Notes: generated by a model not told the origin, from the sequence alone. 64,000 nucleotides of DNA from Lepidodermella squamata (GCA_047495785.1 JBLDXI010000032.1:1922001-1986000); one strand, 5' to 3'. Positions 3,761-41,900 are shown, numbered from the stretch's first letter. A program made the numbers and translations.

Positions 3761-6700
3761 ATGACCGACAGCAACATTCTCAATGTATCTGCCAAAATCC
3801 GCGAAGACTCTCAGCGCTATTCGTCGCCCGAACCATTTCTAGTATGCGGAAGTCACTTTCCACTAACTTCATTGTTAATTTCATCCATTCGAGTTTAGAA
3901 GCTGTTTTCGGATTTCGATACTCTGTCGGAAATAAACTTCTCGGAGTCCGTATTTTTGACCAACTTACATTTGTCTTACATTTCAAATGCAACACGAACT
4001 CACCAATTTGACACAGTCCGCATTGTTAATATATCATTCTGTCCAAATATTGATGATTTCGGCGTCGAGTGCTTGGCGTCGGCTTTCTCCAAGTTAGAAA
4101 AGGTGAAAAAAATTCTCTGCTTATCAATCGCTTTCCAATATTCCCATTTTTTCCCAGATAATTGCGTCAGGATGCGTCTTGTTGACTGAGAATTCCATTC
4201 GATCTATCGCATCTCTTTGCCCCGGTATTCAGACTGCTGTATTCGATCACACGAGTGTTAGATTTGTTCCTGTGGGCACATTAGACTCCAACAAGCTATC
4301 GATTAATAGTTGCCCCCTACTCACTAAAGTCGTTTCGTCTGTGCCTATGACTATACCGCCGTATTTCTTTCATAGCAAGGTCCTTTTGATGAAGACAGTG
4401 GAAATGAAGGGTATCTCCTTGGCTCCGAAGTTGTTTCCAGATTCAATATCGCTAAAAGGCTCAGACTCGGTTGGGTGTGCGCTACATCGATCCAATGGTT
4501 TCGTTATCGTCGAATGTGTGGAAGGCAGCGATGTGGAATTATTTGTCACAGAAAATTGTATGGTAGTACTGCCATATGATACGACAACAACGATAAATCA
4601 GCAGTGGTATTCAGTTGAAAATCGTCTCAAGTTTTTAACATCATTTTCTGGTCATTTGAAAGTTGCGTGCATACCATACGCCGATTCTTCAAAGAAGGAA
4701 AAGCGAAATAAGTTAGTCAAGTCTATAAAGGAGGTAATCATGGATGAATTAGGTCGTGTAAATCTGCATGCAGATGAGCATTTGGCTAGGTATCGATCTG
4801 CTGTAGAAAAAAGGCTTCAGTTTGTTGCTGGGAAAACAGAGCTTATCAGTTGGCTAGATGCAAACAAACTTTGTTCCGATATACCTGAGTTTCTATCGCC
4901 TGACGATTTCGAAGCCATAGCTGAGGTGGCACAGAGGCCTTTTTTCTGCAAAGTGGAAGATTTTATCCCCAAAATTAAGGCTGTGGTTGAAGAATCGACA
5001 GATATTTGTTGGCTCTCATTAATTCAGCTATTAGTTGAGACTGGTAACTTGTGGCTTGAGAAATTCATAGGTCGTGAAGATAAAATGCCCGGCCCCAGCC
5101 ATGTTTTAACCTCGCTTTCTCGTTTCATTGAATTCATCGCTGCATTTCGTGGTGCCCACGAAACTAACGCAGGCAAAGAGGATGTCAGGTGTTTACCATC
5201 GTCTACAAGTTTGTGCTCAATGGCACAGCTTTGCGCTCATTTCAAGGACGAAAGCGGCGCAGAGCTTTCATCTCAAAACCAACAGCGTCTATTTAGGGAA
5301 TTCGAATTCGCTGGCCTGGGACTTTTTCGTGCTAAGAATGCTCTAGCCAGTTACACACTTCTTAATCTGAGTGAGCCCACCGTTGGCTTCGAGCATTTCA
5401 CGCAAATTTTCGACCAACATTCCAAAGCAAACACATTTTTCGCTATCATCGAATACCCGCTATTTACTTATCCGCAGTTTATGTTTCATCGTTTGCTTGC
5501 AGTTCTTGCAAGAGTGCACCAACCGTCGTTGATCTGGGACACCGGCGCGTTCTTTTACGATTCTTTTTACGTGGATATTCTAGTCAGAGCCCATAATATG
5601 GCGCAGTGCATTGCCGTGCAAATTTCATCAGATAATGTCTCATCCGATTCTGATCAAATGTCATGTATCCTCGGAACATGCTCGCTGATTCACACTATAT
5701 GTTGTGCTGTCCTGAACCCTTTCTCGCCAGACGACTTGCCAAAAATGAAACTGGATGGCATCCGATTTTTATCGCCAGGAAAAGTTGACCATTGTTTCTC
5801 GAATGTGACGCCTTTTTCGTTTTCTAGGCAGTTTGATGATGCAGCGACTAGATGTTTGAAATGCTTACTCGACCCATACTTTGTATCCGGCTTGAATCGT
5901 TTAGTAACAGGATGTCAGCCAAGTATGTGGCCTGTTTTGCTAAACAAACATAATGGAAGTGATAACGAATCGGTTATTCCAATAATTTTGGACGAAATTG
6001 GTAGCGATGTTGGAAAGGCTTGGCTTGGTCAAGAATTTGCTGATTTTTTCGTTCCCACTGGAATTAAAAAGCTGGCCATTCATTCTAACAGTTACGTAGA
6101 AGATAATGGTAGCTTCGAGCTTGATATTGCTAAAATTTTGAAAAATTTACCCGTGAGAGTAGAAGCAATGCATCCAGAGAGTGGCAAAGTCCTAGTCCAG
6201 ATCTCACAAAATGGGTCCAAATTGGCTGAGTCTCTCTTTGAAAGCTCAACTAAATTCATATCTGTTGTCTTGCGATTTGATGGCGACGAAAAGATCATCT
6301 TTCATCACAGATGTGCTGCTATTAATTGGCCGACTGAGGCCCCTAAAGATTCGTTGTGGCTAACTGAAGCAAAATATGTCGAAGACGCGAAGGTGGTCGG
6401 CGCGCTATGCTCAGAATCTCTGGGTGAGATGGCGGGAGTCTTTGAAATGGCATTCAAACAGAGCCAGTTCATGCGCGAAGTGACACCGTTTATTCCGTTT
6501 CAATTCCTAAATTTGACTTGGCCGTCGTGTTTGTGGCCGAATCGTTCGAAACTAACAGATTTCTCCAGTCTCAACATGCTGTGCGCATCTCCTGGCCTTC
6601 TGCATTTTGTTAATATGGCGCCAATTAAGGATAAATTCTTTAGGAAAAATCAAAATATGCTGTCTCGCATTGCGATATTGTTCATTATGAGGTTGATTGG

Positions 6701-11740: not shown

Positions 11741-14700
11741 ATGAGATCGACAGTTCGCAAGAAACTCAAGGTCAACTTTTCTACTGAAGTTGATGTGAAA
11801 GAATTACCGAAGGAGGAAGCTGCTAATGACGATAGTCAGCCATCAGGTTTGATTGATAGATTTTGACGAGATGAGATGTATTTAAATCCTTCTTATAGAA
11901 TCCGCGACAGATGTTGCTGTTCCGGAGAAAGAAGGTTGCTTACCATTTGCGACCGAATGAGAAAATATTAATATAATTTTTTTGAAAATTCAGAAATTGA
12001 GGTAGAAAACGAATCTAAACAGAGCAATGCGAAAGCAATGGACTTCGAAAAAGCAAGAATATCGAAAATTAAAAATGTATATATATAATTTAATTTAATT
12101 TTAAGGATTTGATTGCTGCCAAAGGGAAGCTCAAGCCCCCAAGCGAAAATTCGAAACATAGTAAGTTGATGAGGCTATAGGTAGTGTCTACTAAGCGAAT
12201 TTTGTATGGCTAGTGCGCATCATTTCCATCCTACCTCTTGTCGAAAAGCGCGACATGATACCAAGCGATTATTTGGTAAATAACCAAATTTTAATTTGGA
12301 ACGATACGACATTGAATTCTGTGTTTTACGACAGCAACTATTCCAAGATAAAAATGCGTCTGCCGCAAATGGCCTGGATTTTTCGAACGTTGAAGACATT
12401 CATGATTACCATTTTTACTTCTGGCCTCCGTTTCAATCAATTACAATTCTAAGCATATCGTTCTGCGTGAAGGTTTCTGACGTTGGAATTACGCAGATTG
12501 GCTACGGATTTCCGAATCTCGAAAAAGTTGGAGAAGAACTGAAAAATTGGGTTAAGTTATATTTTTACGTTTAGATAACAGCAATCGGTTGTCGACTTAT
12601 CACCGAGTCTTCTCTATCGTTTCTCTTCAACAAATGCGAAAAGCTTAAATATTTTAACGCAAATTTTACCTCAGTCCGTTACATTCCAACCAACCTACTG
12701 GAAAATGCCAACATTTTCGTCGAAGGCTGTCCACTTATACTTCCGGCTGAGACGTTGCGCAGACCAGAAGGTTCATATATCCTTTCATTTTATATTTTAT
12801 TGAAGTAATTTTTATTTTTATATGCAGAAATTCCTGACTCTGTGACAAAAAAATTGACCCTTGCAAAAGTGTTGATTTTGAAATCAAAAGAAATGCGTAA
12901 GGTTTTCGTTGGTCCTCACCTATTTCCTCCTGATAGTAAGAACCGCTTAGAGCTAACACAGCCTGTTTGCTCGTATCGATCAGGACCTTATTGCGTTGTT
13001 GAAATTTGCGAAGATGGTCCTCTTCATGCGATAATAACGGAAAATTGCTTTGTTGTTGTTCCGTATTATCCAGGTCCGTTTCCTCCATTCAGCTCAGTTG
13101 AATGTCGGATTAATCTCGTAGCATCGTTTATTTGCAATTTTAAAGTGGCTGCGGTGCCAATTAAGCTCAGCAAAGTCGATCCAGTGGTTGTTGAACTTAT
13201 AGGAAAAAACGACGTAGACTACACGGCTGTAAACAATTTGGTTATAAATTACGGAATTAAAACGGCAAATCCCAAACTGGCGAATGCGGGCAATAGGAGA
13301 CTCTTGATCACCGCTTTTTCGCCTCATTCGTTTCCGAATACAATTTTCGCTGCCCAAGACGGGTTGAAGCAGTGGCTTGAGACGAACCGTCCACATGCAA
13401 CTTTGCCGACATCTGTAATATCCACACTTTTCGCGGCTTATTCTAAAATCAATCATGAAGGAATTAGTATTAACGATTTCGGTATTCTGATGAAATCTCA
13501 GCTACCAAATGCCTTCAACGCCGTCTCATTCGCCGAAATTCTCGCAGAAACTGGCAATGTTTGGATTGAGCCGTGCGAAGGCTTTGACGGACCTTTACAC
13601 AGCGCCTCACATGTCCTCCTTAATTTTGCTTCTATCGTCGAATTCATCGTCAAATTCGCGTCGGCTAAAGATACATTCCCCTCAAAATGTCAAGTGGCAT
13701 GCTTACCGGACTCGACCCCATTGTGTAATATGGAGCCATTGAAAACTGAATTTTTCAGAGGGTTGGACGAAGATCAGATCGAGAGGCTACTTCTCAAACT
13801 CGAATTGGCAGGTATAGGGGTACTCAGTAAGGATTTCGCGCTTAGTTTGAGTAATTTGCCTCCAGAGCCAGTCGCTTTGTTGGATGCATTCATTTCGAAA
13901 AATCATTCGAATCCTCATTACTTGGAAATCCGGTATCACCTGTTTTGCCGACCCACTGCAGCGTTTCATCACCTCGTCGCGGTGATTTCAAAAATGACTA
14001 TGCCTACGCTATTATGGGCTGATGGAATGCTGTTAAACGAGCTATCCCATTTGACAGTTTCGATTCAATGCGAAGATCATTATCGAGTTGTCGCAGCTAG
14101 ATTTTTTGGCATTAATTCCGATGCAGCCCGTTGTTCCGCCTCAATATTTCATTGTTTGATGGCCACTACATTGGCGAGATTTTCTTTGGATAATCTGGAT
14201 GATTTGGGAGCTGAATCAGGAATTCGCTCCTTATCCCCTCGAAAGATTCGACATGAGATTACAAATTACCTAGAATTTAAACCAAAGTCATTTTCTCGAG
14301 AATTCGACCAGACCATCGCCAGATGCCAACATTGCTTGTTAAACGTCAGAGTACTGTCAATAGTACAAGCTTTGTACGCCCATCATGCCTCTCACTCATC
14401 TCATTCTGTCTCAAACATCTCACCAGGCTTTCCGAAAGTGTTCAAGCTGCCCGGTTTCACATTTTTTCCCGGACAGCAAGCCTCGTCGATCAATATATAC
14501 CGATTGCCTTCAACGGGAAGTTTTACTTTGAATATTTCTGCTGAAGATGAGGTCAAAAATGGAATGATGATTGGATTTTTGGACGGCTTTTTTGTGCTGC
14601 CAGATCGTGAAATGAAGATATCGACTTCGTGTGGAATTCACGTTGAGTTACAGCGCATAAAATCGGGTGGAATGAAAATAATTGCATCTGTAAATGGATT

Positions 14701-17700: not shown

Positions 17701-19972
17701 TCATCGCCGTATTATTAATGAAATTAGTTTTAAATACCTCCCGACCGGATTGTTCAATCGGGCGCAAGTTCGACTGCAAACCTACTCGGACGTGTCGGTC
17801 ATTTGGCGAAGGGGCAGTTTACTGAAGAAAAGCAGCCATTTAGCGTTAATAACCCAGTTGCAGGCGAATAGCGTGATTAGCATTCAGGTGCAAGGCCCGC
17901 GTCCTGAAAATTTGTCATTTCTCATCCTGGAAGTTTTCAATAGTTTAATTGCAGATAGCTTCAATGGGCTTCAGCATGACGTGTCGTTTTCTTGCCCTGA
18001 GTGCGTAAATTTGCGTATGGCCGAGCCTAGTATGTTTGAAAGTTCTCGAATTCGCCGAGCTATAGAACTGAAAATTCCGTCCCTTCAGTGTTATTCTTAC
18101 TTTCATCTGGTCCCGACACAAGAGCTTCGCTTGTTGGGTCCTAACCTTGAATCATCGGGAGATTTCGATCTGCATTGGGAGAGAACGCTGCATCAATTGA
18201 ATGGCCTATCTCAATCATTGCAAACTGACGTTGTTGTCATGGGCTGTCCATTAGATTCGGACAGTAAGGATTTTGTAAGCGCTGACGTCATAGCCAGAGA
18301 TTTGGGTGCAACCAATAGCTCGCTTTCGATCAAAGCCATCTCAGACGCTTCCGCGATGACTTTCGAGCAGCTAGCAATAATTATTCGAGCCACTCGAGTA
18401 GTAATTTGCTGCATTTCATCATCATTCATGGCAGATACTTCTTGCCAATCCGCCTTAATTTACGGCCATGAGACGTTGCAAAAACCTATGGTTACAGTCT
18501 TGGTGCGGGATATGGACGTGAAACAACACCCTTCCTTAGCGTTCATGATTGGCGATGAGGTGTATATCAAAGCTATTAATCGAACGAAATACAAAATTGA
18601 AGACATTTCTGCTGCAATACAACTCCGCCTTAACAAAAATGATCAGAAATCTCAGAAAAGTCCCCTGGTTTTTCTTTCGTATTGTTGGCAAAACAGTAAA
18701 GAAGCAGTAGAAAAAGGGACGAAGGGCAAATCTGGCTCTTGTGGCGTTACTGACCCTCGAAAATTGAAGCGATTTTTGAGTGATGAAAACGGAATCGAAA
18801 CCTGGCTCGACATTGAGCAGGTCGGGCGTGGTGGTTTATTCGAAGAAATTGCCAACGGTCTTCGGAAATCGAAGCTCGTCATTGTGTGCGTTTCAGATGA
18901 GTATGTCGAGTCGAAAAATTGCCTACGTGAATTTCATTTCGCAACAACGGTTTGCCAGTTGCCGATTGTTATGTGTGTGGTGGGTACCGGTTGCCAGTGG
19001 AAACAGTCGGAAGTGACGTTTGTAGCGGCTCAATCTGCCCATAGCATCAATTTCCAACTAAATTTGCCTGAAAATTACACCCGTTTACTCGAGATTGTCA
19101 AATCGTTTATTCATGTGAAAAAGCCGCCGTTATTAAGGCGGAAATCGGGCATTATTCGGAAATCAGAATCTGAACGAGATGAAGGGGTTTCAACGGAAAG
19201 TGTATCGATCATGTTCGAAGAAATGATTGAGCTTGGCCAATCAAGGTTTCTAAAGCAGATTTCCGAATTTCCCAGCTCTACTAGGTCTAAGCCTTTCCCA
19301 AGACTTGTCATTTTCGATATTGACAAATCGAATGTCCCGAGAGTTAACGAAGAGTCTTTGGTCGAATTTATCAACCGATTACCTTGGTCATGTCGTTTTC
19401 TATGTGAATCCGAATCTGGTTGGCATTCAACAGATGTGAATATGAAATTGAGCGAGAAAAATCAAATCGCCCCCGATTCATTATTGGCCAAAAGCTCGGC
19501 CTATCTTGGCCGCGTTTTCTCCCTAGTGTCCCACGGAACAAGAGAAAAGCCGCGAATTCTCCAAAATTCGACTTATCAACTGATTGCTGAGTATATAAAC
19601 ACCTTTGTAAAACTGGAAGAGTCTTTCGAGAGCGAATATAGATTTCTCATTGATCTCGCAATTTCCTCTGGTCGAGATCACGGCCTATTCCAGTGCCACC
19701 TACCTCTTGGCAGAGACGTGTGGTTGTGCAGGGAACATCGAAATGTGAATCGGGCAACAAATTTGAGTCAAAATATATCTGATACAAGCAACTCATCGCC
19801 TGCAAATATCTCAAATTCGAAGGCTGAAAGAAGCCCATTTATCAATGATGCTGTGATAGCTCGTCAATTCGCTAGTCAGGTTACATCGCCAGATATCGGC
19901 CTTGGCGAAAAAATTGTGCCCAGTGGCCAAGTAAAGGCCGCAAAGACGAGTCGTGCTTGTGCGATACAGTGA
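11741..19972 (+). CDS. Roco2: kinase-less LRR-ROC-COR-TIR-TIR protein with CaaX (CAIQ), multi-exon
   Basis: Several small in-frame exons in 11741-12770 (MRSTVRKKLKVNF...; LRR exon ISFCVKVSDVGITQIGYGFPNLEK), then intron 12771-12827 and a 7.1-kb terminal exon containing ORF 12842-19972. Motifs: GLGGAGKTS, WDFAGQ, GTHAD, IINPQW, VFLSYCW, SKNCLREF. Confidence 0.9.
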
Positions 19973-20203: not shown

Positions 20204-23200
20204 ATGAGCAAGGGCCCTCCGAAAGCCCCCATCACAGGGTCAAATGCTGTAAGACGGACCATCGTCATGCGTCCCAAGGCTCGGCCTAATGAAAGCGAAG
20301 CGGAACGTCAGGAGCAAGGTAGGGTAAGATTAATGGGAACTAATCGAACTTGATTTCTCTATTCTTTATAGAGAGGATTGCAAACGAAAATGCTGAAGCA
20401 TTTGGCCGATTGGCTGAAATGGAGAAGCACTTTGATAAGAAAAGCCCAGAACCTGAACAGAAGACTGCCGGCAATAAAGATGACTTTCTAAGCGAGATAA
20501 GGCAGGGTGTCCGACTGCGGTCTGTTAATGAACCGCGGAAAGGTAAAATTGTCAACTTGATTCTAAATTTCAACCGAAAGGATTTTTTCTATCAGCTGTA
20601 AAGGCTGTTGATGTAACCGCTGCGATCAACGCCAATCCGAACGGGTTCGGTAGTGCTGCTGCTTATTCCGTTTGTTTATTTTCCTGGAGAATAAAGAAAT
20701 GCTTAATTTTGAAATTGTAGTCGGTATTTAAAACCGGCAAAGGCGAAGAAGTTGGTTCAATAAACTTCTGCGGCACGGTCAGATTGGTGGACACTCACTT
20801 CTACTACTGGCCTGACTTCAAAACAGTTACCACCCTAAATGTCTCGTACTGCCCTAATATCACTAATTTTGGCATACGGTTGATTAAAGACGCATTTCCC
20901 AAGCTAAAAAAGGTAATTTGATGACAATTAAAGTGGGTTTTTTTAAATTCTGATGAATTTTAGTTGGACGCTTCCGGATGTCGATTAGTTACCGAATCAG
21001 TCGTCGAAACTATTTCTGACCCTGCATTCACTGCGATTTTCAACTGGACTGGTATTCGTTACATCCCTCATAAAACACGGTTCCTGAGGTTGGAAACGAA
21101 GGGATGTCCGTTAATTATCAAGAAAGAAACCAGTGATCTCATTGCCAATTCACCTGATGGTATAATTTGTTGTTATCGTAAATTTGTATCTGAAGTTTCG
21201 TTTAGGAACTATCAAACAGAAGTCTCTAGGAGAAAAATCTGCGGCGGCTTCTGAGTTTACCCAACTGACAGCCATGTTAAGTGAATATTCTTTCGCTAAA
21301 ATTGTTGTCATCAAACCCGAGTCGCATGCAGCTAAATCAATCGCCATTGGCTGGCTGAAACCCGACGGCCCGGTGGAAGGTGTCTCACAGTGCGCCATTT
21401 CTTATCGCTCAGGGCCTTATCGTGTTATTGAATGTGATTTTCATGCGCCTCTTTCGCTTTTCCTTACAAACAATTGCATTGTGGTGATACCTTTTGACAA
21501 TGATTCGGCATCAGCTGTTTTGCAATCGGTCGAGAGTCGTTTGTCGTTCATTTCCTCGATTTTGACTGACTTTCAGGCCATAGCCGTTCCCGTTTCGCTC
21601 GAGAGTCCGGTTGAATTCGACGAAAGCGCCCTTTCCAGTGTGAAAATTGAGCAGGCTAAGGCATCTCTGCAAGGCACCACAGTGGAGGAATCTGAAAAGG
21701 AGAAACGGAAGCCCGAGGAAAATCCCAAGGCTGCTAGGCGTTATTACTATTTATCGAACCATTTAACGTTTTTGCCGAGTTTTGAATCAGCTAATGCTTG
21801 GTTGGTTGCGAAGAAGTCTTATTTAAACATTCCGCCTACAATTTTTCCATTGTTGGAATATTTGACAAAATCAAATATTTTCGATATGACTGAAAAACTA
21901 TTCATCACCTCGGAGGACTTGGGTTCAATCCTCCCTCAATCGCTGCTTGAAAGTTTGGCTGAGAAGTCAATAATGCCTAACTGGGCATCATTCGCGTCAG
22001 TTTTAGCTGAAACCGGAAATATTTGGAGTGAATACTCAAGCAGCCATGATGACCCAAATCTGAATAATTCGTTTTCCTACTTGACAAGTACGTCGAATTT
22101 GATGAAAATTGTCAAAATACTCACTACCACCGATGACATGGAAAGTAGCATAGAGAATGTGAAATGCCTTCCCCCAGGTACCAAGCTGTGTAGAATCGAT
22201 GCGATAGCCCATTTGTTAACTGGCGTTGCCGCGTCTGATAAAATTCGCTTGTTTTCTGAATTCGAACGCAGCGGAATCGGAATCTTCAATTTGAAGCAAA
22301 ACCTGGCATTATCAGCTGTTAACCTAGCTACCAGTCCCGCTATCTCTGACGGACATTTTTCGAGTAGTTCTGAGCTCAATCTGAACTCGGAGCATTATGA
22401 CATTGCTTGCCACCCAGATTTGGTCATTCACAATCTGTTATCTCGCTTATGCAAGGTGTTCAAACCCGTTTTGATTTGGAAGCACGGTGCGGTCTTTGAT
22501 GAATGCTCCTCCTTGATAATTAAAGTCAGGTCGAACCTTCCTGCGCCGAGCCATAACCAATATTCGGTTTTTGTCTCGATGTCGAGTGATATTCGTGGCT
22601 TTGGCGATTATCAAGTTCAGCGGCGCGAGTTGATTCAAGCGACCTGTGGGGTGGTCGCACAAATTTGTACCGCTGTCTTAGCGCCTTATTCTATCAATGA
22701 TTCGTACAAAAATCCTCCGAATTCGTATTTTCACCCATTGCTCCAGTTCGATCCCAAAACTGCAGTTATCCGAACTTTCTCGCGAGATTTTGATATGTCG
22801 CTACCTCGTTGCGCCCGTTGCTTATTGACCGCTGATATCATCGGTCTGCTGAGACAAGCGAATTGGCGATACACTGCTAATAGCTTCAACATGATCGGAA
22901 AGGCCAGCGAAGAGTTCGAGATTCCGATTCCAATCGACCTAACTGTACCGTCCAATTTCATTGAGATCTTAACCAATTCAGGATTCGAATTTTGCCGATT
23001 TCATGTCAGCAATGAACTAGGTCAGTGCGACGGTAATACCAGTATAAAAATGTACTTCAAAGAGAAACATATTTGCGCGATCGAAGAGCAAGAAATGATT
23101 CACGAGACTAGCGGCCACGGCAAGTTCAGTAAAACCAAACAATCTGCGGCGATCAATATCGAAAATCTGTATCCTGTCGTTCGATTCGATGCTCGTTTGA

Positions 23201-26200
23201 TTGATAGCAGAGTTGAAATAGTGGTGGCATTCAACGGCCGCGCTCTTATGACATCAATTATTAAGGTGGCTGATACAAATTTGTTATCGCATTTGATTAT
23301 GACAGTTAAGCCTGACTCGCATCAGAATCCTTTCTACTCATATGGGGCGAGGAAGTGGGACAGGCCACCACTCGCTAGCAAAGCCGAGTTATTCGCCGAT
23401 ATTAAGGTGGATATGATAGTGGAAATTATAATGCCGAATGGGGTGATACGCCCCGCTCTTGTATTCGATTACGACGAGAACAATGCTACAGTTGAAATGT
23501 CAGTACGGCTATCACACAGCAGATTTGTCATTGAAAAGCGTGATATGAATTCTCCGAATTTGTTGCCAGTCGGGTTTTGTAAGTACTTGATGTCAGACGA
23601 CTTAATTTTCAGCCGTTTCCGAACTTTAGTTTTAGAAAAGCTTAACGTTGAGCTCAGCGATAAGCTTGAAGACCCCTGGGACAATGATCTACATATTTAT
23701 ATGTTCAAGGCAAAGAAACTAGTGAAAGGCACAATGGTACAGTACCACTATAGTGACGATGTAAATGAACGGGAAAGAGAGCTAGCCGAAATAAGAAATG
23801 AGGCGGATGACCCTAAAAAAGTGTTAAAATACGATGGCGAGCGTTATCGTATTTTCGAAAGTGAAAGCATCTTTGATAACCCCATATCCTACCCGTTCAG
23901 CCTATTTGACCGCTCGCTATTGGTCGGATTTTCGCCTCTAGTCGTTTCTCAGCTGAAGAATCCATGCCCAGTAGCCCTATCGCGAAAATTGGCTAAAGCT
24001 CGAAGCGAACTTGACAGAACCACTCTGGACGCCGAATTGCAAAATTTCATCAGATTGAATGTTTTGACTCTGCCGCTTCGTCAATTGTTTGAGGTGCACA
24101 ACTGTTTATTTCCGTCGTTTTCACTCGTTTATCGCGATGATTCGTCGCCACTAACATCCCACGTGCTGTGTGGAGCTTCAATGATTCATTTTACAAATGA
24201 AATGTTGCCTCCATTTGGGGACATCAACACAAATTCAGTTATTCCACGAATAATAATCGCCGTTATTCTTCGAATGATTGACCAGCCTCACTTTATTCCA
24301 CCAAATGTTGAGAACATATTTCCGAATTTGAAAACCGACTCTTTTGCGAAGAAAGATATAGTCTCACCTAGAGTCTTCTTGGAGAGGACGTTTCGCGAGA
24401 CGGTTTTTCCGTTCCTATTAGATTTTTACCTATCTCATGTGAATGTGAAAAATGATTGGAAAAAAGTTGTCCTTCTGAATGACAGCTACGAACTGCACAT
24501 CAAGGAGAAGGATGACGGTAAAAATTGCCACATTGTGTTCGCGAAGTGGCTTGCATCCGAGTACGACCTCTACAACTCAAACACCGAATGTCCCTTGGTG
24601 ATGTGTGCAAAACATGCTTACATCAATTCTGAGTATGACAGACGGAAACGTACTCAACTGCTCGATGAAATGCATGAAAAACTAGAGCCAACACTTGATA
24701 TGATAGGGTCGAATTACGACGATTTTATCACCTGTCGCGCTTTGAAAGCCGATCCTGCCAAACTGGATTCAGTCGCACCCACTCTGTCCCCTTATCTACG
24801 GGGTTTTTATGTTACAAGCTGGAATGTGTTTCAACTAGAGCGATTGCATTTGAGGCAAGTACCTAAGTTCATCTTCTCATTTCGTCACTTGACCGAGCTC
24901 TTGTTGTGTTACAACAAATTGGAAGATTTACCTGACGAATTAGCCGCCTTGAAACCTACTCTTCATCTGTTGGACGTGTCTCATAATACTTTCACTGAAT
25001 TGCCAAAAGTTGTCTATCAACTCACTGAATTACGGTCTTTGAGAGCTGACTATTTGAATATTTCGCAGGTTGATGACAATTTAAGCGAGCTTAAATTTCT
25101 CCAACTGCTTTCTCTACGCTCGAATTGTCTGACAAATTTTCCGGCAGTGATCTCTAAACTGGAGTATCTTGAAGTGCTTGATCTATCAGGAACGCCCCTG
25201 TTTCCATCAAATGTTCGCTATATGGAAGACATTTACAGTTATACTTATAAATGGAACATGCGTAACGAATTCTTCCTAAAGGATATTTCAAACTACTTTG
25301 CGAATATTCCGTTCTCCAATACTGGAGTAATTGACGTCGAACCTTTCAATGCATATATCTTTGATAGCATACCCAGAATGAAGTTTGAAAAGGGTTTCCC
25401 GGCGGAAATATTCAGCTTGACCAGACTGAAAGAGTTGAGTCTCGCCTATCAACACGTTACCGACATACCTGATGAAGTAGGTCAATGCAATTTGTTGGCC
25501 AGATTTGATTTGATGGGCTGTTTAGCTCTAAAAAGAATTACACCGTCAATAGCTCAGGTTCCGCTGAAAATGCTAAATCTATCGAATTGCCCCATGCTGC
25601 AAACCCCGCCCGCAGAAATTCGTAAACGCGGTTTTGCGGCGACAACCGCGTATTTTCGCCGGCTTTCAATGGGCTCTACCAATGTCCAGCGGACTAAATT
25701 GATGTTCGTCGGGTTGGGCGGGGCGGGCAAAACCAGTCTAGTCAGTGCGTTAATTAACCAAAACGGGAAAATGACCCGCCCAAACGGGAGAGACACCGTT
25801 GTAACCGATGGAATCGATATCACCGATTGGGAATTAGACGCTGGAAACCGGTCGAAGGTTCAGTTCAAAATGTGGGATTTTGCGGGCCAGGTTGTTTACT
25901 ACAACACGCATCAGTTTTTCCTGTCGAATCGAGCCGTTTACCTGATTATGTGGAACATTCGATTGGGCCACGAACATGCCGGTATCGATTTTTGGCTGAG
26001 TTCGATCGCAGTTCATGCCCCACTGGCTTCGGTTATCGTTGTTGGAACTCATGCTGACCAAGTCCCAGAGGAGCGCTCGTTTCTACCCGAGGCGAGTTAC
26101 CGCGATCGTTTCTCTAATGTTTGTGGTTTCCATTACGTGAGTAGCCATACCGGTAAAGGAATCGCAGAACTTCGCGAGCATATTCGCCAGGTGGCGTTGA

Positions 26201-29028
26201 AGCAAAAGCACATGGGCGAAGCGATTCCCCAGGGTTGGCTTACTTTGGAGACAGATTTGACGTCGAAACGGAAAAACAAAAAAGACGAAGCCAACGAGTC
26301 TTCCATCTTAATGATTGATGAAGTGATGGAATTAGCAGATTCTGTCGGAATTTATGATGAGGACGAATTAGACCAGGCCTTGCAATTCTTCACAGATTTA
26401 GGGTCTATCCAGTATTTTAAAACGGACTTTTTACGCGATCGTGTCATCATCAACCCGCAATGGATCGTTGACGTTTTAGCTTGTCTGGTTTCGATCAACG
26501 ATAGTCCGATAGTTGATGGTAAGATGTATCATAAAGACCTGGCAAAAATATGGCAAAAATACCCGCTTTCACTCCATCCGTGGCTTCTTAAGTTAACTGA
26601 AGCGTTCGATTTGACTTACCCTCTTACAAATGAACCTGCATCTATCGTGGCGTGTATGTTGCCTGAAAACGCGCCGCCTGACCTAGCGTGGCCTGATTTG
26701 GAGGAAAACCCAGATTGGCGGCAAACTGAGCTAATTTTATCGTTTAAATACCTGCCAACTGGCCTTTTCAACCGTGCCCAGGTACGCATTTGCCAACTCT
26801 CAGACGCTAAAATGTGGCGGAAGGGTAGCATGCTGGTCAAAAACAAGCATATCGCTTTAATTGCTCAACCGGACGCTTCAACTGTCCACGTGAAGGTCAT
26901 TGGGCCGCGGCCGGATAACATCTCATTTTTGATACTCGAAGTGTTCGATAATTTGATAAACGAATCATTCAACGGCCTTCATTGCGAGTACAAGTTCGCA
27001 TGCCCAGAGTGCGTTAATGCAAGGGCTAGCCAAGTGTCCATGTTTGAAAGGTCGCGAATAAGACGCGCGACTGAACTTCACATTCCAACTATCCAATGCT
27101 TTCACTATTTCCATCAAATCCCGACCAGAGAATTGAGGCAGATGCTACCAGCTGAAAATGTCGGCGATTTCGACTATCAGCTGAGTCGAACTGTTCAGCA
27201 GTTATCAGGGATAAAGAATTCAGTCGCGAATGATGTTTTAATCATCGGTAGTTCTGCCGATAACACCGAAAATTCGCATGAATTTGTTGGAATCGACGAA
27301 ATAGCGAAAAATCTTTGTGAAAATTTGCCGGATTTGAAAATCAACTCAATTAATAACCCGGATTCGATGCAATTCGAGCAAATCAGTTTGTTGATTCGCT
27401 CATCGCGGGTTGTCGTCTGTTGCCTTTCTCCTAATTTTCTCCTCAGTGAACATTGCCAAGCAGCCCTTTTGAGTGCAAGAGAAACTCTGAGGAAGCCTCT
27501 TGTCATCGTTTTACTCCGAGATTTGGACATTCAAGCCAGCGATGCGTTAGCTTTCACAATCGGCGACCAGGTCTACGTTAAAGCCATTAATAGAGGCCGA
27601 TATAAGCCGCTTGATGTGGCTGAAATTGTCAAAATGCGGCTGAGGGAGGCGGAGCGGGTTTCATCGGCCGGTCGGGCCCGTCATCCGCCTATTTTCATCT
27701 CCTATTGCTGGCTTAATAGCAAAGACGCGATTGAACGAGGCTCGAAAGCGAAAGAAGGATCTGTTGGCGTAACAGACCCAAGGTACCTGAAACGTTATCT
27801 GGTCGAAAAGGGCTATGAATGTTGGATTGATATTGAACAGGTCGGTCGGAATGGGTTGTTTGAGGACATTGCGGTCGGCCTGCGTCATGCTCGTTGCGTG
27901 ATTGTTTGCGTCTCTGACGAGTACGTCGAGTCGAAAAATTGCTTACGTGAGTTTCGTTTTGCAACCTCAGCGTGTACTGTCCCGATTATTCTATGCGTTG
28001 TTGGCACTGGAATCGCCTGGAAGCAGTCCGAGGTTAACCTGGTTTTACCTCCCACAGCTCCTGTCATCCATTTTCAGTTCGATTCACCTGCTAATTACGA
28101 TAAGTTAGTCTCAGCTGTTGAGCAAATTCTGGGCAAAAAAGTGGATGAGGCTAAACAACCAGCTAACTTAGCTAGTCTAGGCCGAAATAAAACGATGGAG
28201 GAGATTAAAATGTCCCATGCGGACCAGGCTATTTCCAGCCGAGAAACCTTCACGGATGTTTACCGAGAAATTCGCGAGCTTGAACAGCGACGATTTCTGC
28301 GTCAAATCGCCTCGTTTTCCGAACAAACAACGTGCCCTCGGCTAGTTGTAATTGATGTCGACGAAACTAGCTCGCCTGTTCATAGCGAAGCTGATCCGTC
28401 ATTAGCATCGAAAATTTTCCGTTTTAGTAAGCTTTCATGGTGTTTGAAGTTTCTGTGTGAAAACGAGGATGGTTGGCATTATACCGATAATTCGTTGCCT
28501 ATCGACGCTGATAAGGTGGATGATTTGATTTCGAGGAGTGCGCCGTATTTGGGCCGAGTTTTTTCACTGATGAAACACTCCGATAACCCTCCGCGGCTCA
28601 TGTCAGCCAAGGACCCGGCATTGAGTGAGGTATACGAAACCGCACTGCAAGAAATCGAGAAAATGAAAAAGTTCGAGGAAAGTTTCGAGGCGGATTATCA
28701 TCACTTGGTTCAATTCGCTGTTAAAGTCAATGATCAAGCTACTCTTGGCGGCTTGCGGCTTTGTCAGTTAGCTGTTGGAAAAGAACTTTGGCTTTGCAGC
28801 GAGCATTCAGAAGCGATGAAATCGAAGCTGAAAGGGGTTTCGAGTGATGTTAAGCGCCGGAATAAGAATGCGGACGCGATGACCGGTATCGGCATGGGCG
28901 ACAGCTTCACTGTGAAACATCAGCCGATCAAAGTAGATGCACCCGGTAGACCATTTTCTTCATTGTCGACCAGTGGCAGAGCGCAGTCAGCTAAAGCAAA
29001 AACTAGTCGAGCATGTATTTTGCAATAA
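20204..29028 (+). CDS. Roco3: WH2-LRR-pseudoROC/COR-MBT-like-LRR-ROC-COR-TIR-TIR protein with CaaX (CILQ)
   Basis: ATG 20204 (MSKGPPKAP..) is followed by five short in-frame introns, the last at 21160-21205, and a 7.8-kb terminal exon (ORF 21184-29028) with intact ROC G1-G4 motifs, COR and two TIRs. AATAAA at 29091-29096. Confidence 0.9.
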
Positions 29029-35953: not shown

Positions 35954-38900
35954 ATGAGCAAGGGCCCTCCGAAGGCCCCTATCACTGGGTCAAATACTGT
36001 AAGACGGACCATCGTCATGCGTCCCAAGCCTCGACCTGATGAAAGCGAAGCGGAACGTCAGGATCAAGGTGGAATTTGATAAGTGGAAACTAATCGGACT
36101 TTATTTTCTATTTTTTTATAGAGAGGACTGCGAAAGAAAATACTGAAAAAGAAGCTGAAGCATTTGCTCAATTGGCTGCAATGGAGAAACACTTTGATAA
36201 GAAAAGCCCAGAACCTGAACAGAAGACTGCCGGCAATAAGGATGACTTCCTTAACGAGATAAGACAGGGCGTCCGACTGCGGCCTGCAAATGAACCACGG
36301 AAAGGTAGAATTGTCAAACTGATTCTAAATTTCAACCGAAAGGACTTTTTCAAACAGCTTTAAAGACTGCTGATGTAACCGCTGCAGTCAACGCCAGTCC
36401 GAACGCGTTCGCTACTGCTGCTGCTTATTCTGTTCGTTTTTGACTTTGAGATTACAAATATATTCTTATTTTCAAAATTTTAATTTCAGTCTTTATTTAA
36501 AACCGACAACGGCGAAGAGGTTGGTTCAATAACCTTCTGTGGCACGGTCAAGTTGGTGGACTCTCATTTCTACTACTGGCCTGACTTCAAAACAGTCACT
36601 ACCCTAAACATCTCCTATTGCCCTAATATCACTAACTTCGGAATACGGCTGATCAAAGAGGCATTTCCCAAGCTAAAAAAGGTAACATGATCACAATTAA
36701 GGCGGATTGTTTCATTTTCGATTAATTATAGTTAGACGCTTCCGGGTGTAGATTGGTTACCGAATCAGTTCTCGAAGCTATTTCTGACCCTGCACTCACT
36801 GCCATTTTGAGCTGGACCGGAATTCGTTACGTCCCTCATAAAGCACGTTTTCTGAGGCTTGACATCAGGGGCTGTCCGTTAATCATAAAAAAAGAAGCGG
36901 CTGATCTCATTGCCAACTCCTTCGATGGTAAAATTTGATGACGTATGCGGCATTTTTTTTAACTTAACAACCAGAAAATTTCCTTATTTCGGCGAATCTT
37001 TCAATCTGTAGCACTGATTTCAGGATTTCAGGATTTCAGGAGGAGCAAAAAAAAATTCTTGATTTGAGGAATCTTTCGGCAAACTTCACATTAAAAAAGC
37101 ATATGGGAATCGTGCGATATCGTCAGACGCGCGCATCGCAAAGTTGCCTTTTTTATCCAAGGAGCCCTATTATTTTTGTCCGAAATTCGTCGCTACTTTT
37201 ATTCTGGCTGAAAAATAAAGAGCTCTCAGTGCTGGAATTTTAGTTTTGTGCTCATTCTCTTACATAGAAGCTCAAAAAATCGCTTAAATTCCGAAATGGC
37301 GCAATTTTGATCCACAGTGAAAATCGCCTGAAAATCTAACATCGCGCACTAGATCGACGACAGCTCCAGTTAGGAGGGTTGAATTGAAGCTTATTTACTC
37401 TTATATGCCTTCGAGAAAAACTCAGTAATAAGAAATTCATTGCACGATTGCAATCCAAGCTTTTAACAATTGTAATTGACTCCCTGGTCCGTTTCCAACC
37501 ATTTTACATGCAGTAAAATCCTGCAATCCGGGCTGCAGATTGATGTCAGTTTTGTCGAAAGATTCGCCGTAATAAGCAAATTGTTGCTTTCAAAGTTTGA
37601 AAAATCATGCTGCATACGTTACTATCATGTATTTTAATCTGAAAATTCGTGTAGGAACCATCGAACGGAAATCTCCAGGAGAAGCATCTGCGGCGGCGTC
37701 ATCTACCCAACTTGAAGCCCTGTCAAGTGAATATTCGTTCACTAAAATTGTTGTCATCAAACCCGTCTCGCATGCAGCTAAATCAATCGCCATTAGCTGG
37801 CTGAAACCCGACGGCCCGATAGAAGGTGTTCCACAATGCGCCATTTCGTATCGCTCAGGGCCTTATCGTGTTATTGAATGCGATTTTCACGCGCCTCTAT
37901 CGCTTTTCCTTACCAACAATTGCATTGTGGTGATACCTTTTGACAACGATTCGGCATCAGCTGTTTTACAATCAGTCGAGAGTCGTTTTTCGTTCATTTC
38001 CTCGATTTTGACTGATTTTGAGGCCATAGCTGTGCCTGCTTCGCTCGAAGGTCCAGTTGAATTTGACGAAAGTATGCTTTCCGCTCTTAAAGCTGAGCAG
38101 GCTAAGGCATCTCTGCAAGGCACCTCAGTTGAGGAATCTGAAAGGGAGAAACGGATGCCCGAGGAAAATCCCAAAGCTGCAAGGCGTTATTACTATTTAT
38201 CGAACCATCTAACGTTTTTGTCGAGTTTTGAAGCAGCTAATGCTTGGTTGGTTGCGAAAAAGTCGTATTTAAATATTCCGCCTACAATTTTTCCTTTGTT
38301 GGAATATTTGAAAAAATCAAATATTTTCAATATGACTGAAAAACTATTCATCACCTCAGAGGACTTGGGTTCAATCCTCCCTCAATCGCTGCTTGAAAGT
38401 TTGGCTGAGAAGTCAATAATGCCTAACTGGGCATCATTCGCGTCAGTTATAGCTGAAACCGGAAATATTTGGAGTGAATACTCAAGCAGCCATGATGACC
38501 CAAATCTGAATAATTCATTTTCCTACCTGACAAATACGTCGAATCTGATGAAAATTGTCAAAATACTCACGACCACCGATGACGTGGAAAGTAGCAGTGA
38601 GAATGTGAAATGCCTTCCCTCAGGTACAAAACTGTGTAGAATCGATGCAATCGCCCATTTGTTAACTGGCGTTGCTGAGTCTGATAGAATTCGCCTATTT
38701 TCTGAATTCGAACGCAGCGGAATCGGAATCTTTAATTTGAAGCAGAACATGGCATTATCAGCTGTGAACCTAGCCAGTAGTCCTGCTATTTCTGTTGGGC
38801 ATTTCTCAAGCAGTTCTGAACTGAAACTTAGCTCGGAGTATGGCGAAATTGTTTGCCATCCAGATTTGGTTGTTCAAAATCTGATATCTCGCCTATGCAA

Positions 38901-41900
38901 GGTGTTCAGACCCATTTCGATTTGGAAGCATGGGGCTGTATTCGATGAATGCTCCTCCTTAATAATTAAAGTCAGCTCGAATCTTTCTGGCCCAAGTCGC
39001 AAACAGTATTCGGTTTTTGTCTCGATGGCAAGTGATTCTCCTGACTTTGGGGACAAGGATAATCAAGCTCAACGGCGCGACGTCATTCAAGCATCGTGTG
39101 GGGTTGTCGCACAAATTTGCACCGCTGTTCTAGCGCCTTTCTCCATCAACGATTTGTACAAAAATCCTCCGAATTCGTATTTTCACCCATTGCTCCAGTT
39201 CGATCCCAAAACTGCAGTTATCCGAACTTTCTCGCGAGATTTTGATATGTCGCTACCTCGTTGCGCCCGTTGCTCATTGACCGCTGATATCATCGGTCTG
39301 CTGAGACAAGCGAATTGGCGATACACTGCAAATAGCTTCAACATGATCGGAAAGGCCAGTGAAGAGTTCGAGATTCCGATTACACTTGACCTGACTGTGC
39401 CGTCAAATTTCATTGAGATCTTAACGAATTCAGAATTCGAATTTTGCCGATTTTACGTCAGCAATGAAGTTGGTCAGTGTGACAGTAATACTAGCATAAA
39501 AATGTACTTCAAAGAGAGGAATATTTGCGTAATCGAAGAGGAAGAAATTGTCCACGAATCAAACGGCCACGGTACATTCAGTACGTGCAAGCAATCCGCG
39601 ATGATCAATATCGCAAATCTGTATCCTGTCGTTCGATTCGATGCTCGATTGGTAGATAACAGCGTTGAAATTGCAGTGGCAGTTAACGGCCGCGTAGTGT
39701 TGAAATCTATCGTTAAGGTGGCTGATATCAACTTATTATCGCATTTGATTATGACAGTTAAGCCTGACTCGCATCAGAACCCATTCTACTCATATGTGGC
39801 GAGGAAGTGGGATAGACCACCGCTTGCTAGCAAAGCCGAGCTATTCGCCGATATTAAGGTGGATATGATATTGGAAATTATTATGCCGAGTGGAGTGATT
39901 TGTCCGGCTCTTGTAATCAATTACGATGAGAGCAATGCTACAGTCGAGATGTCAGTACGGTTGTCGGACGTTGAAATTGTCATCGAAACGCGTGAAATAA
40001 AATCTCCGACTTTGTTGCCTGTCGGGTTTTGTAAGTACCTACTGTCAGACGACGTAATTCTCAATCGATTCCGAACGTTGTTCCTGGAAAGGTTTAGCGT
40101 AGAGCTCAGCGATAAGCTCGAAGACCCTTGGGACAATGATGAGCCAAGTCTCTATTTATTCAAGGTAAAAAACATAGGGAAAGGCCCCTCAAGTAAAGAG
40201 GAAGCCGAAATGAGGAAAGATGCGGCGGATGCTAAAAAAGTTATAAAATACAATGCCGGGCGTTACCGTGTTTTCTATACAAGTAGCAAATTCGATAACC
40301 CCGTGCGATACCCTTTCAGCCGATTTGACAGTTCGCTGTTGGTCGGATTTTCGCCTGCTGTTGCTTCACAGCTAAAGAACCCATGCCCAGTAGTCCTACC
40401 GCGAAAGCTGGCAAAAGCTCGACGTGAACTTGACAGGCCTACTCTCGACAACGAATTGCAAACATTTATCAGAGCGAATGTTTTGACTCTGCCGCTTTGT
40501 CAGTCGTTTAGCGTGCAGGACTGCTTTTTTCCTTCGTTTTCACTCGTTCATGGTAAAGAGGAGGCGCCATTGACAAACCACGTGTTGTGTGGAGCATCTC
40601 TGATTCATTTCACAAATGAAACTTTGCCTCAATCCGTAATTACCAAGGGTGCATTTATGCCCCGAACATTCATCGCCACCATTCTTCGAATGATTGACCA
40701 GCCTCATTTCATTCCAGCGAATTTTGAGAACATATTCCCCAATGTGAACACGGACTCTTTTGCGAAGAAATATGTAGTTTCTCCAAGAGTTTTCTTGGAG
40801 ACAACCTTCCGCGAGACGGTTTTTCCGTTTCTATTAGATTTTTACTTATCTCATGCGGATGCTAAACAAAATTGGAAGAAGGCCACTCTGTTGACTGAAA
40901 GCTACGAAATTCACCTCAAGGATAAGGGTGAAGTTAACAATTGTCAGATTGTTTTCGCGAAGTGGCTTGCATCCGAGTACAATCTCTACAACTTAAACAG
41001 CGAATGTCCCTTGGTGATGTGTGCAAAACATGCTTACGTCAATTCTGAGTATGACAGGCGAAAACGAACTCAACTCCGCGATAAAATCCATGATAAACTA
41101 GCGCCAACACTCGATATGATCGGGTCGAATTACGACGATTTTATTACCTGTCAGGCTTTGGTTGATGCCAAACAGATCCGTTCCGATTCAGTTGTGGCAA
41201 CTAACTCACCTTATATTCGACATTTGCACGTTGGAAACTGGGATTTGCCGGAAGTGCTGCCGTTTATTCTCTCATTTCGTCATTTGACCGAGCTCCTGTT
41301 GTGTTACAACCGCTTGAATGATTTGCCTGACGACTTGGCCGCCTTGAAACCAACTCTTCATCTGTTGGACGTGTCTCAAAATGCTTTCACTGAATTGCCA
41401 AAAGTTGTCTATCAACTCACGGAATTGCGGTCCTTGAGGGCTGACTATTTGAATATTTCACATGTCGATGACAATTTAAGCGAGCTTAAATTTCTTCAAC
41501 TACTTTCTCTACGATCGAATTGTCTGACAACTTTTCCGGCAGTGATCTCTAAACTGAAGCATCTTGAAGTGATTGATCTATCAGGAACGCCCCTGTTTCC
41601 TTCGTATGCTAGCCATGCGGACTACATCTACGGTTATGTTAGAAAATGGAACATGACTATTCTATTCTCTCATATTTCATCCTACATCCAGGCGAACAGG
41701 GCGGATAAAGGGCGGCGAACAGGAAGATATTGATGTCGAATCATTCAATGCATATATCTTTGATAGCATACCTAGAATGAAGTTTGAAAAGGGCTTCCCG
41801 GCGGAAATATTCGGCCTGACCAGACTGAAAGAGTTGAGTCTCGCCTATCAGCATGTAACCGACATACCCGATGAGGTAGGTCAATGCAAATTCTTGGCAA

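What the first reader, a model, noticed from the sequence alone, without database searches (positions are those of the whole stretch)
21290..22830. Hidden N-terminal pseudo-ROC-COR: each protein seems to carry a dead second GTPase module
Seen: the unannotated N-terminal region aligns in order with the protein's own ROC-COR. FAKIVVIKPESHAAKSIA ~ RTKLMFVGLGGAGKTSLV (P-loop destroyed). YRVIECD ~ FKMWDF. SLFLTNNCIVVIPFD..VESRLSFISSI..AIAVPV ~ QFFLSNRAVYLIMWN..IDFWLSSIAVH..VIVVGT. LAETGNIW ~ FTDLGSIQ. LFSEFERSGIG ~ LLKLTEAFDLT. HPDLVIHNLLSRL..IWKHGAV ~ LPTGLFNRAQVRI..MWRKGSM. RCARC ~ CPEC. The same pattern is present in Roco1 (~4370-5870) and Roco2 (~12860-14340). Established: Roco proteins work through ROC-COR dimers. 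Inference: an intramolecular pseudo-GTPase/GTPase heterodimer that autoinhibits the protein or acts as a decoy for GTPase-targeting effectors.
Basis: inference. Interest (0 to 1): 0.85.

Follow-up and report, generated by a model that had tools for sequence, protein, structure and literature searches.

The report
Dead second Roc-COR in Roco-TIR proteins
Each of the five giant Roco-TIR immune-type genes in this window starts with a hidden, degenerate copy of its own GTPase-plus-COR module that has lost every nucleotide-binding motif, and the same unannotated module occurs in related proteins of many invertebrate phyla.

Summary
Window 21274-22860 (gene R3), and the matching stretches of the four paralogs, encode a ~530-aa module that is a remote homolog of the protein's own Roc-COR.

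- **Sequence searches at first:** pairwise BLASTP, Pfam and a 5-sequence profile found nothing.
- **Wider family:** I then found the module in the pre-Roc regions of about 80 invertebrate Roco-TIR proteins (molluscs, annelids, nemerteans, brachiopods, amphioxus, hemichordate, a nematode).
- **Profile comparison:** a 38-sequence profile aligns collinearly with Roc-COR (hhalign Prob 97%, E 5e-11, 448 columns). The halves tested apart give ψRoc-Roc P 8e-4 and ψCOR-COR 6e-10. The crossed controls give 0.4-0.5.
- **Structure:** a template-free AlphaFold model (pTM 0.77) matches only LRRK1, LRRK2 and C. tepidum Roco Roc-COR at the top (Foldseek E 6e-13, Z 16).
- **Dead GTPase:** none of the ψRoc sequences examined keeps a P-loop, DxxG or NKxD motif.
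- **Selection and context:** the module is under purifying selection (dN/dS 0.2-0.26). It is preceded by its own cysteine-type LRR exons.

The proposed mechanism (a cis pseudo-dimer that autoinhibits, or a decoy) is untested. I found no description of this module in the papers searched.

The parts
21286..21843 (+). ψRoc of gene R3: a small-GTPase-fold domain (module residues ~5-190) without P-loop, DxxG or NKxD motifs
   Evidence: hhalign of this half alone against Roc gave P 7.8e-4 over 102 columns, beta1 to beta5 in register. It scored 32.6 against a maximum of 29.8 in 300 shuffles. VIA gave Z 10-11 to Rab/Rag GTPases over model 1-190. The top PDB sequence hit was the M. barkeri Roco2 Roc domain 4wnr_A, E 0.12. 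Motif loss is shown.
21844..22368 (+). ψCOR-A of R3 (module residues ~191-365)
   Evidence: hhalign ψCOR against COR gave E 6e-10. The 'LG' winged-helix motif and the LP..P....W end are aligned. VIA gave Z 11.3 to the C. tepidum COR domain 3dpt_B over model 191-486.
22369..22860 (+). ψCOR-B of R3 (module residues ~366-529). It holds the invariant W402 and G405. The last ~50 residues, with the CxxC motif, are modelled at low confidence.
   Evidence: Sub-threshold Pfam COR-B hits occur in 17 of 38 family members, best E 2.3e-4. The COR-B start is aligned by hhalign. The AlphaFold sheet plus long helix span residues 368-472.
20742..21131 (+). Two short upstream exons of R3 (20742-20915 and 20973-21131) that encode cysteine-containing (FBXL-type) leucine-rich repeats directly before ψRoc
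   Evidence: An HMM of the 37 homolog regions upstream of ψRoc (A5; Pfam LRR hits) matched these stretches at E 2.7e-10 and 1e-3.
4347..5903 (+). ψRoc-ψCOR of paralog R1. Its upstream LRR exons are at 3920-4108 and 4155-4325.
   Evidence: Alignments (28% identity to R3). jackhmmer E 4.5e-179. LRR exons.
12842..14374 (+). ψRoc-ψCOR of paralog R2. Its upstream LRR exons are at 12350-12529 and 12587-12775.
37720..39312 (+). ψRoc-ψCOR of paralog R4. Its upstream LRR exons are at 36508-36684 and 36741-36890.
55067..56656 (+). ψRoc-ψCOR of paralog R5. Its upstream LRR exons are at 54523-54699 and 54756-54911.
25681..27168 (+). The genuine Roc-COR of R3, with an intact P-loop (GLGGAGKT) and DFAGQ. 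It was the reference for all comparisons.
   Evidence: Pfam Roc 2.6e-18, COR-A 1.8e-26, COR-B 1e-22. P-loop scan.

Best explanation
**Shown.** The first ~530 residues encoded by each Roco-TIR gene in the window are a degenerate second copy of the Roc-COR tandem (ψRoc-ψCOR-A-ψCOR-B). The overall order is LRR(CC-type)-ψRoc-ψCOR-(MBT-like/linker)-LRR-Roc-COR-TIR-TIR. ψRoc keeps the small-GTPase fold but has lost the P-loop, the DxxG Asp/Gly (a conserved Glu sits at the Asp position) and the NKxD-type motif, so it is a pseudo-GTPase. The module is old: it occurs in spiralian, deuterostome and nematode Roco-TIR proteins. It is kept by purifying selection.

**Inferred.** Its most likely role is as a non-catalytic, COR-type interaction scaffold. 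Genuine Roco proteins dimerise through COR-B and couple their GTPase cycle to a monomer-dimer change. The dead copy would therefore pair with an active Roc-COR, in cis or between chains, and set whether the C-terminal TIR domains can assemble.

I give ~0.9 to the structural identity and ~0.35 to this specific mechanism.
For: **Homology.**
- hhalign Prob 95-97%, E 2.7e-8 to 5e-11, collinear over 448 columns.
- Halves tested apart: P 7.8e-4 for ψRoc against Roc and 6e-10 for ψCOR against COR. Crossed controls: 0.53 and 0.43.
- Shuffle and reversal controls were all below the real score.
- Pfam COR-B sub-threshold hits in 17 of 38 members and COR-A in 1.
- The best PDB sequence hit is a Roco Roc domain.

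**Fold.**
- AlphaFold2 without templates, on an alignment that holds no genuine Roc-COR: pLDDT 73.5, pTM 0.77.
- The top 36 Foldseek PDB hits are all LRRK1, LRRK2 or CtRoco; the best is E 6.4e-13.
- VIA Z 16.4 to LRRK2 1331-1916 and Z 16.3 to CtRoco 451-891.
- AFDB cluster hits are all Roc/COR proteins.

**Dead motifs.** No G1, G3 or G4 motif in any ψRoc sequence whose motif region is aligned. Relics remain, such as a near-Walker-A stretch in the Ptychodera protein P0004.

**Constraint.** dN/dS is 0.20-0.26 among R3-R5, against 0.04-0.09 for the real Roc-COR.

**Spread.** ψCOR is in 78 of 120 database homologs. ψRoc lies directly upstream in ~47 of them.

**Context.** A cysteine-type LRR lies upstream in the homologs and as exons in the window.

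**Dimerisation of genuine Roc-COR through COR.** Review PMC6337361.
Against: - The window proteins themselves give no Pfam, BLASTP or PDB sequence hit. The homology is visible only through profiles built from distant relatives.
- The ψRoc half alone is modestly significant (P ~1e-3 to 1e-4).
- The AlphaFold model is of medium confidence. It is poor at residues 135-147, 256-266 and 479-529.
- Nothing here tests nucleotide binding, dimerisation or any contact between the dead and live modules.
- About a third of related Roco-TIR proteins show no detectable ψ module, so it is not essential to the family's core function.
Confidence: 0.85

Rival explanations
1. Integrated decoy. The dead Roc-COR mimics a host GTPase or Roco target, so that pathogen effectors which attack GTPases bind it and trigger the TIR domains. 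This would resemble the integrated decoys of plant NLR receptors.
For: The proteins look like innate-immune receptors: LRR plus TIR, in an expanded tandem array. ψ evolves 3-5 times faster than the real Roc-COR.
Against: dN/dS of 0.2-0.26 indicates purifying rather than diversifying selection. The module is conserved across phyla with the same invariant core residues. A decoy would be expected to keep the surface of a working GTPase, switch regions included, and these are degenerate here. No effector is known.
Confidence: 0.1
2. Different origin. The N-terminal LRR-ψRoc-ψCOR is not an internal duplicate of the C-terminal unit. It is instead a second, separate Roco gene (one with FBXL-type LRRs) that fused to a Roco-TIR gene and then decayed.
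For: The LRR before ψRoc is the cysteine-containing FBXL type, unlike the LRR before the real Roc. An unchecked note of this scan reports a kinase-less Roco with FBXL-type LRRs and a degenerate G3 motif elsewhere in this genome (s1-380230).
Against: The ψ module is too diverged (10-14% identity to any Roc-COR) to place on a Roco tree with the data in hand. Foldseek scores LRRK1, LRRK2 and CtRoco about equally. I could not read the other locus.
Confidence: 0.4
3. ψRoc is still a working nucleotide-binding switch that uses non-canonical residues, so the protein has two live G domains.
For: Some proteins classed as pseudo-GTPases still bind nucleotide (general knowledge). A Glu is conserved at the Walker-B Asp position, and Lys/Ser relics remain near the P-loop site.
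Against: There is no glycine-rich loop, no DxxG Gly and no NKxD-type base-recognition motif in any of the aligned family members. In the model the alpha1 helix after beta1 is reduced to two short turns.
Confidence: 0.06
4. Chance or convergent resemblance. The N-terminal region is an unrelated alpha/beta domain plus a helical domain that only looks like Roc-COR.
For: BLASTP and Pfam find nothing for the window protein. Rossmann-like alpha/beta folds are common.
Against: Both halves match in the right order and spacing, with E 5e-11. The COR fold is specific to Roco proteins, and all top 36 PDB hits are Roco proteins that align over ~500 columns. The controls are clean.
Confidence: 0.03

Closest known systems
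Roc-COR tandem of Roco proteins (human LRRK2 and LRRK1, Chlorobium tepidum Roco; PDB 8e05, 6hlu, 3dpu, 8tzh)
   Same: Same two-part fold in the same order: a small-GTPase domain, then COR-A and COR-B. Foldseek E down to 6e-13 and Z 15-16 over ~350-400 aligned residues. An LRR lies directly upstream, as in LRRK2 and CtRoco.
   Different: All nucleotide-binding motifs are lost. Sequence identity is only 10-14%. It falls below the Pfam thresholds. It sits in the same chain as a second, intact Roc-COR.
Invertebrate MBT-LRR-Roc-COR-TIR proteins noted in immune-gene surveys (for example Aplysia LOC101848126 = P0058; PMC9334734)
   Same: This is the same protein family as the window genes: 44-66% identity in Roc-COR, with the same C-terminal architecture.
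   Different: The survey lists only the annotated ROC, COR, MBT, LRR and TIR domains. It does not describe the N-terminal ψRoc-ψCOR module. I found no paper that does, though the library is incomplete.
Pseudo-GTPase domains next to a live G domain, such as the pG1/pG2 domains of p190RhoGAP (from my own knowledge, not checked here)
   Same: A G-domain fold that has lost its nucleotide motifs and is kept as a structural or regulatory part of a large multidomain protein that also holds a real GTPase domain.
   Different: Here the dead copy includes the whole COR dimerisation device, not just the G domain. The family is Roco rather than Rho-related.
JAK kinases: pseudokinase (JH2) plus kinase (JH1) tandem (an analogy from general knowledge)
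   Same: An internal duplicate of the catalytic module that lost catalysis and, in JAKs, regulates the live copy in cis. This is the model for the proposed mechanism.
   Different: A different fold and different chemistry. Regulation in cis is shown for JAKs and only conjectured here.

Membership tests
Roco (Roc-COR tandem) superfamily | A small-GTPase (Roc) fold followed directly by the COR-A and COR-B folds in one chain | tested here: met
   The AlphaFold model (pTM 0.77) aligns over both parts to LRRK1, LRRK2 and CtRoco: Foldseek E 6e-13 to 1e-5 and VIA Z 13-16.4. AFDB hits are all Roc/COR proteins.
Roco (Roc-COR tandem) superfamily | Detectable sequence homology to Roc and COR profiles | tested here: met
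   Profile-profile: E 5e-11 for the whole module, 7.8e-4 for Roc and 6e-10 for COR, with clean crossed controls.
Roco (Roc-COR tandem) superfamily | Passes the curated Pfam thresholds for Roc, COR-A and COR-B | tested here: not met
   The window module has no Pfam hit at E<=10. Relatives give only sub-threshold COR-B hits (17 of 38, best 2.3e-4) and one COR-A hit (6.8e-5). None gives a Roc hit.
Roco (Roc-COR tandem) superfamily | Intact G1 (GxxxxGK[ST]), G3 (DxxG) and G4 ([NT]KxD) motifs | tested here: not met
   All three are absent from the five window copies and from every other ψRoc sequence whose motif region is aligned. The genuine Roc in the same proteins keeps them.
Roco (Roc-COR tandem) superfamily | GTP binding and hydrolysis, and COR-mediated dimerisation | not testable with these tools
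   This needs purified protein, or at least a multimer prediction.
Pseudo-GTPase (pseudoenzyme class) | A G-domain fold with the catalytic and nucleotide motifs lost, retained under selection | tested here: met
   Fold: Z 10-11 to Rab/Rag GTPases over model 1-190. Motif loss. dN/dS 0.20-0.26. Conserved across phyla.
Pseudo-GTPase (pseudoenzyme class) | Shown lack of nucleotide binding or hydrolysis | not testable with these tools
   This needs a biochemical assay.

The most novel reading that the evidence does not exclude
The dead and live Roc-COR modules of one chain pack against each other through their COR-B domains. This would form a built-in pseudo-dimer that replaces or gates the homodimer used by other Roco proteins, so that GTP turnover in the single live Roc decides when the C-terminal TIR pair is released to signal. 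It would be a natural, single-chain version of the Roco monomer-dimer switch, comparable to the JH2-JH1 arrangement of JAK kinases.
Probability: 0.25. Interest if true: 0.8.

Novelty: new variant of a known kind. Interest (0 to 1): 0.62.

Why it matters
Roco proteins, which include the Parkinson's disease kinase LRRK2, are thought to work through Roc-COR dimers. How the GTPase cycle is tied to dimerisation is still debated (PMC6337361).

A large and widespread invertebrate family that carries one live and one dead Roc-COR in the same chain would be a new architecture for this superfamily. It is also a candidate natural experiment on that question, because one half of the 'dimer' is frozen.

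The finding assigns a fold to ~530 residues that are currently unannotated in scores of the database Roco-TIR proteins retrieved here. Together with the upstream LRR, it shows that these proteins contain two LRR-Roc-COR units. This bears on how these presumed TIR-based immune receptors are regulated.

Tried and rejected
- BLASTP of the module against its own Roc-COR gave nothing (best E 4).
- Pfam at E<=10 on the module of R1, R2 and R3 gave nothing.
- A PDB sequence search with the 5-paralog profile gave only chance hits, such as ribosomal uL22 at E ~1.
- hhalign with 5-sequence profiles gave Prob 0.3%.
- The language-model atlas search returned low-scoring aminotransferase clusters (0.64). 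I treat these as noise.
- The word-indexed search with residues 1-530 returned no hit at all.
- The exhaustive search of 1.84 billion representatives found only one relative, P0001 from a metagenome, at database-wide significance. The family was recovered only by searching the pre-Roc parts of Roc-COR homologs as a small local database.
- The first AlphaFold run, on 6 sequences, was too poor to use (pLDDT 52).
- Literature searches for a second or pseudo Roc-COR returned nothing relevant.
- I considered and rejected a TIR remnant directly after ψCOR in the window proteins. Pfam finds none there (member 1), although the amphioxus relatives have a TIR_2 hit at that place.
- In the shuffle test some hhalign runs printed format errors. 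These runs could only repeat a previous shuffle's score, so the conclusion is unaffected, but the distribution is approximate.

Full report
**What is in the window.** The window holds five large + strand genes of one family: R1 (4179-8411 plus 8447-11557), R2 (12842-19972), R3 (21184-29028), R4 (37597-41733 plus 41777-45433) and R5 (54962-62794). A short GT-AG intron splits R1 inside its Roc domain, so the genome is eukaryotic. Pfam finds LRR, Roc, COR-A, COR-B and two TIR domains in the C-terminal half of each. It finds nothing in the first ~1200 residues. The finding concerns the first ~530 residues of R3 (window 21274-22860).

**First tests were negative.**
- BLASTP of this stretch against the protein's own Roc-COR gave nothing (best E 4).
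- The five paralog copies align with each other: 25-29% identity for R1 and R2 to R3, and 83-88% for R4 and R5. So the stretch is a real conserved domain.
- A profile of those five against a profile of the five Roc-COR regions gave Prob 0.3%, E 0.19.
- A PDB sequence search and a language-model atlas search gave only noise.
- An exhaustive HMM search of 1.84 billion representative proteins found one relative, P0001. It is a 2328-aa protein with the same architecture, from a metagenome contig.

**Enlarging the family.** A search with the genuine Roc-COR returned 339 invertebrate Roco-TIR proteins at 44-66% identity. They come from molluscs, annelids, nemerteans, brachiopods, rotifers, flatworms, amphioxus, Ptychodera, Trichoplax and a nematode. 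The window's own organism is not among them. I cut each of the 120 listed proteins before its genuine Roc domain, so no real Roc-COR could contaminate the search. I then searched these pre-Roc parts locally.
- The module profile hit many of them.
- jackhmmer converged on 84 targets for the second half of the module, query residues ~263-520. That is 78 of the 120 database proteins.
- A separate jackhmmer with the first half (1-262) found it directly upstream in ~47 proteins at E<1e-20.

So the two-part module is conserved across phyla. A 38-sequence alignment (A4) was built from it.

**Homology to Roc-COR.**
- A4 against the 5-sequence Roc-COR alignment: Prob 95.2%, E 2.7e-8, 217 columns covering COR-A and COR-B.
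- A4 against a 125-sequence Roc-COR alignment: Prob 97.1%, E 5.2e-11, 448 columns, collinear from module residue 5 to 528 and Roc-COR 2 to 488.
- Halves tested separately: ψRoc against Roc P 7.8e-4 (102 columns, beta1 to beta5 in register) and ψCOR against COR 6.2e-10. The crossed comparisons gave 0.53 and 0.43.
- The ψRoc-Roc score (32.6) exceeded all shuffles: 150 column shuffles (mean 12.6, max 20.3) and 150 block shuffles (mean 15.4, max 29.8). It also exceeded the reversed alignment, which scored 13.3.
- As a separate check, Pfam scanning of each A4 member gave sub-threshold COR-B hits in 17 of 38 (best 2.3e-4) and one COR-A hit at 6.8e-5.
- The best of all PDB sequences for the A4 profile was the Roc domain of Methanosarcina barkeri Roco2 (4wnr_A, E 0.12).

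The last one (RCARC ~ CPEC) is not reproduced consistently.

**Structure.** AlphaFold2 used no templates and used A4, which holds no genuine Roc-COR. It gave mean pLDDT 73.5 and pTM 0.77. The earlier 6-sequence run gave pLDDT 52.
- Foldseek against the PDB: the 36 hits with E<=1e-3 are all LRRK1, LRRK2 or C. tepidum Roco. Most align over ~450-600 columns, and the best is 8e05_A at E 6.4e-13. Small GTPases follow.
- VIA-align: Z 16.4 to LRRK2 1331-1916, 16.3 to CtRoco 451-891 and 15.0 to LRRK1 638-1299.
- VIA-align also matched the domains singly. The COR domain alone (3dpt_B) matched model 191-486 at Z 11.3, and Rab/Rag GTPases matched model 1-190 at Z 10-11.
- AFDB cluster hits are all Roc/COR proteins.

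**It is a dead GTPase.** Not one ψRoc sequence whose motif region is aligned has a Walker A loop, a DxxG motif or an NKxD/THxD motif. A conserved Glu sits where the Walker-B Asp would be. Relics of the P-loop helix survive in some bivalve members, and the Ptychodera protein has a near-Walker-A stretch. The genuine Roc in the same proteins is intact.

**Selection.** Among R3, R4 and R5, dN/dS is 0.20-0.26 for the module and 0.04-0.09 for the real Roc-COR, at similar dS. The module is therefore constrained, but less tightly than the real one.

**Context.**
- In the homologs, the ~250-350 residues before ψRoc have the consensus of cysteine-containing (FBXL-type) LRRs. Pfam finds LRR families in many of them.
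- An HMM of that region finds two short exons upstream of every gene in the window. The long ORFs therefore lack their 5' exons.
- The architecture is LRR-ψRoc-ψCOR ... LRR-Roc-COR-TIR-TIR.
- Downstream of ψCOR, 14 of 40 relatives have an MBT repeat. The amphioxus proteins have a weak TIR hit.
- About a third of the related proteins show no detectable ψ module. Many of these have short N-termini.

**Mechanism.** This part is inference. Genuine Roc-COR modules dimerise mainly through the C-terminal part of COR, and a monomer-dimer change accompanies GTP turnover (review PMC6337361). A dead copy that keeps the full COR fold is best explained as a COR-type interaction scaffold. It would pair with a live Roc-COR in cis or in trans and so control TIR assembly. 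I rate this at about 0.35. I rate the decoy idea at about 0.1 and residual nucleotide binding at about 0.06.

**Origin.** Internal duplication and fusion with a separate FBXL-LRR Roco gene cannot be told apart with the present data.

**Novelty.** The family has been listed in immune-gene surveys with only its annotated domains (PMC9334734). Searches for a second or pseudo Roc-COR found nothing, within an incomplete library. I file it as a new variant of a known kind: a Roco protein with an extra, catalytically dead Roc-COR.

Noticed in passing
window 3920-4325, 12350-12775, 20742-21131, 36508-36890, 54523-54911: Each of the five genes has two short upstream exons that encode cysteine-containing (FBXL-type) leucine-rich repeats. 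The long ORFs are therefore not the true 5' ends, and ψRoc has its own LRR in front of it, as the real Roc does.
   Followed up: partly
window ~41690-41777: R4 changes reading frame inside the variable non-LRR stretch of its LRR region. The text upstream continues in frame 0 to a stop at 41733, and the conserved text resumes in frame +1. This is a frameshift (pseudogene or assembly error) or a very small intron. R3 and R5 read through the same place.
   Followed up: partly
window 8409-8460: A short (~50 nt) GT...AG intron splits R1 inside its genuine Roc domain, between the P-loop and switch II. The other paralogs have no intron there.
   Followed up: no
P0010, P0011, P0012 (Branchiostoma), residues ~764-865 of P0010: The amphioxus relatives give a weak Pfam TIR_2 hit (1.2e-4) right after, or inserted into, ψCOR-B. 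This hints that the ancestral N-terminal unit may have been a whole LRR-Roc-COR-TIR. Pfam finds no such TIR hit in the window's R3.
   Followed up: partly
P0004 (Ptychodera flava), residues ~385-400: At the P-loop position of ψRoc this protein has a three-residue insertion that makes a near-Walker-A string (G-x3-G-K-K-S). It is the closest thing to a surviving P-loop in the family.
   Followed up: no
window 22861-23850 and homologs: An MBT repeat follows ψCOR in 14 of 40 relatives (best E 9e-25). Pfam finds none in the equivalent 330 residues of R3, so any MBT-like repeat in the window proteins is degenerate.
   Followed up: partly
window 245-2080: A 611-aa ORF lies upstream of the array on the + strand. 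It is unrelated to the Roco genes by eye, and I did not examine it.
   Followed up: no
another piece of the same genome (note s1-380230): An unchecked note of this scan reports a kinase-less Roco with FBXL-type LRRs and a degenerate G3 motif. It could be a free-standing relative of the N-terminal LRR-ψRoc-ψCOR unit.
   Followed up: no
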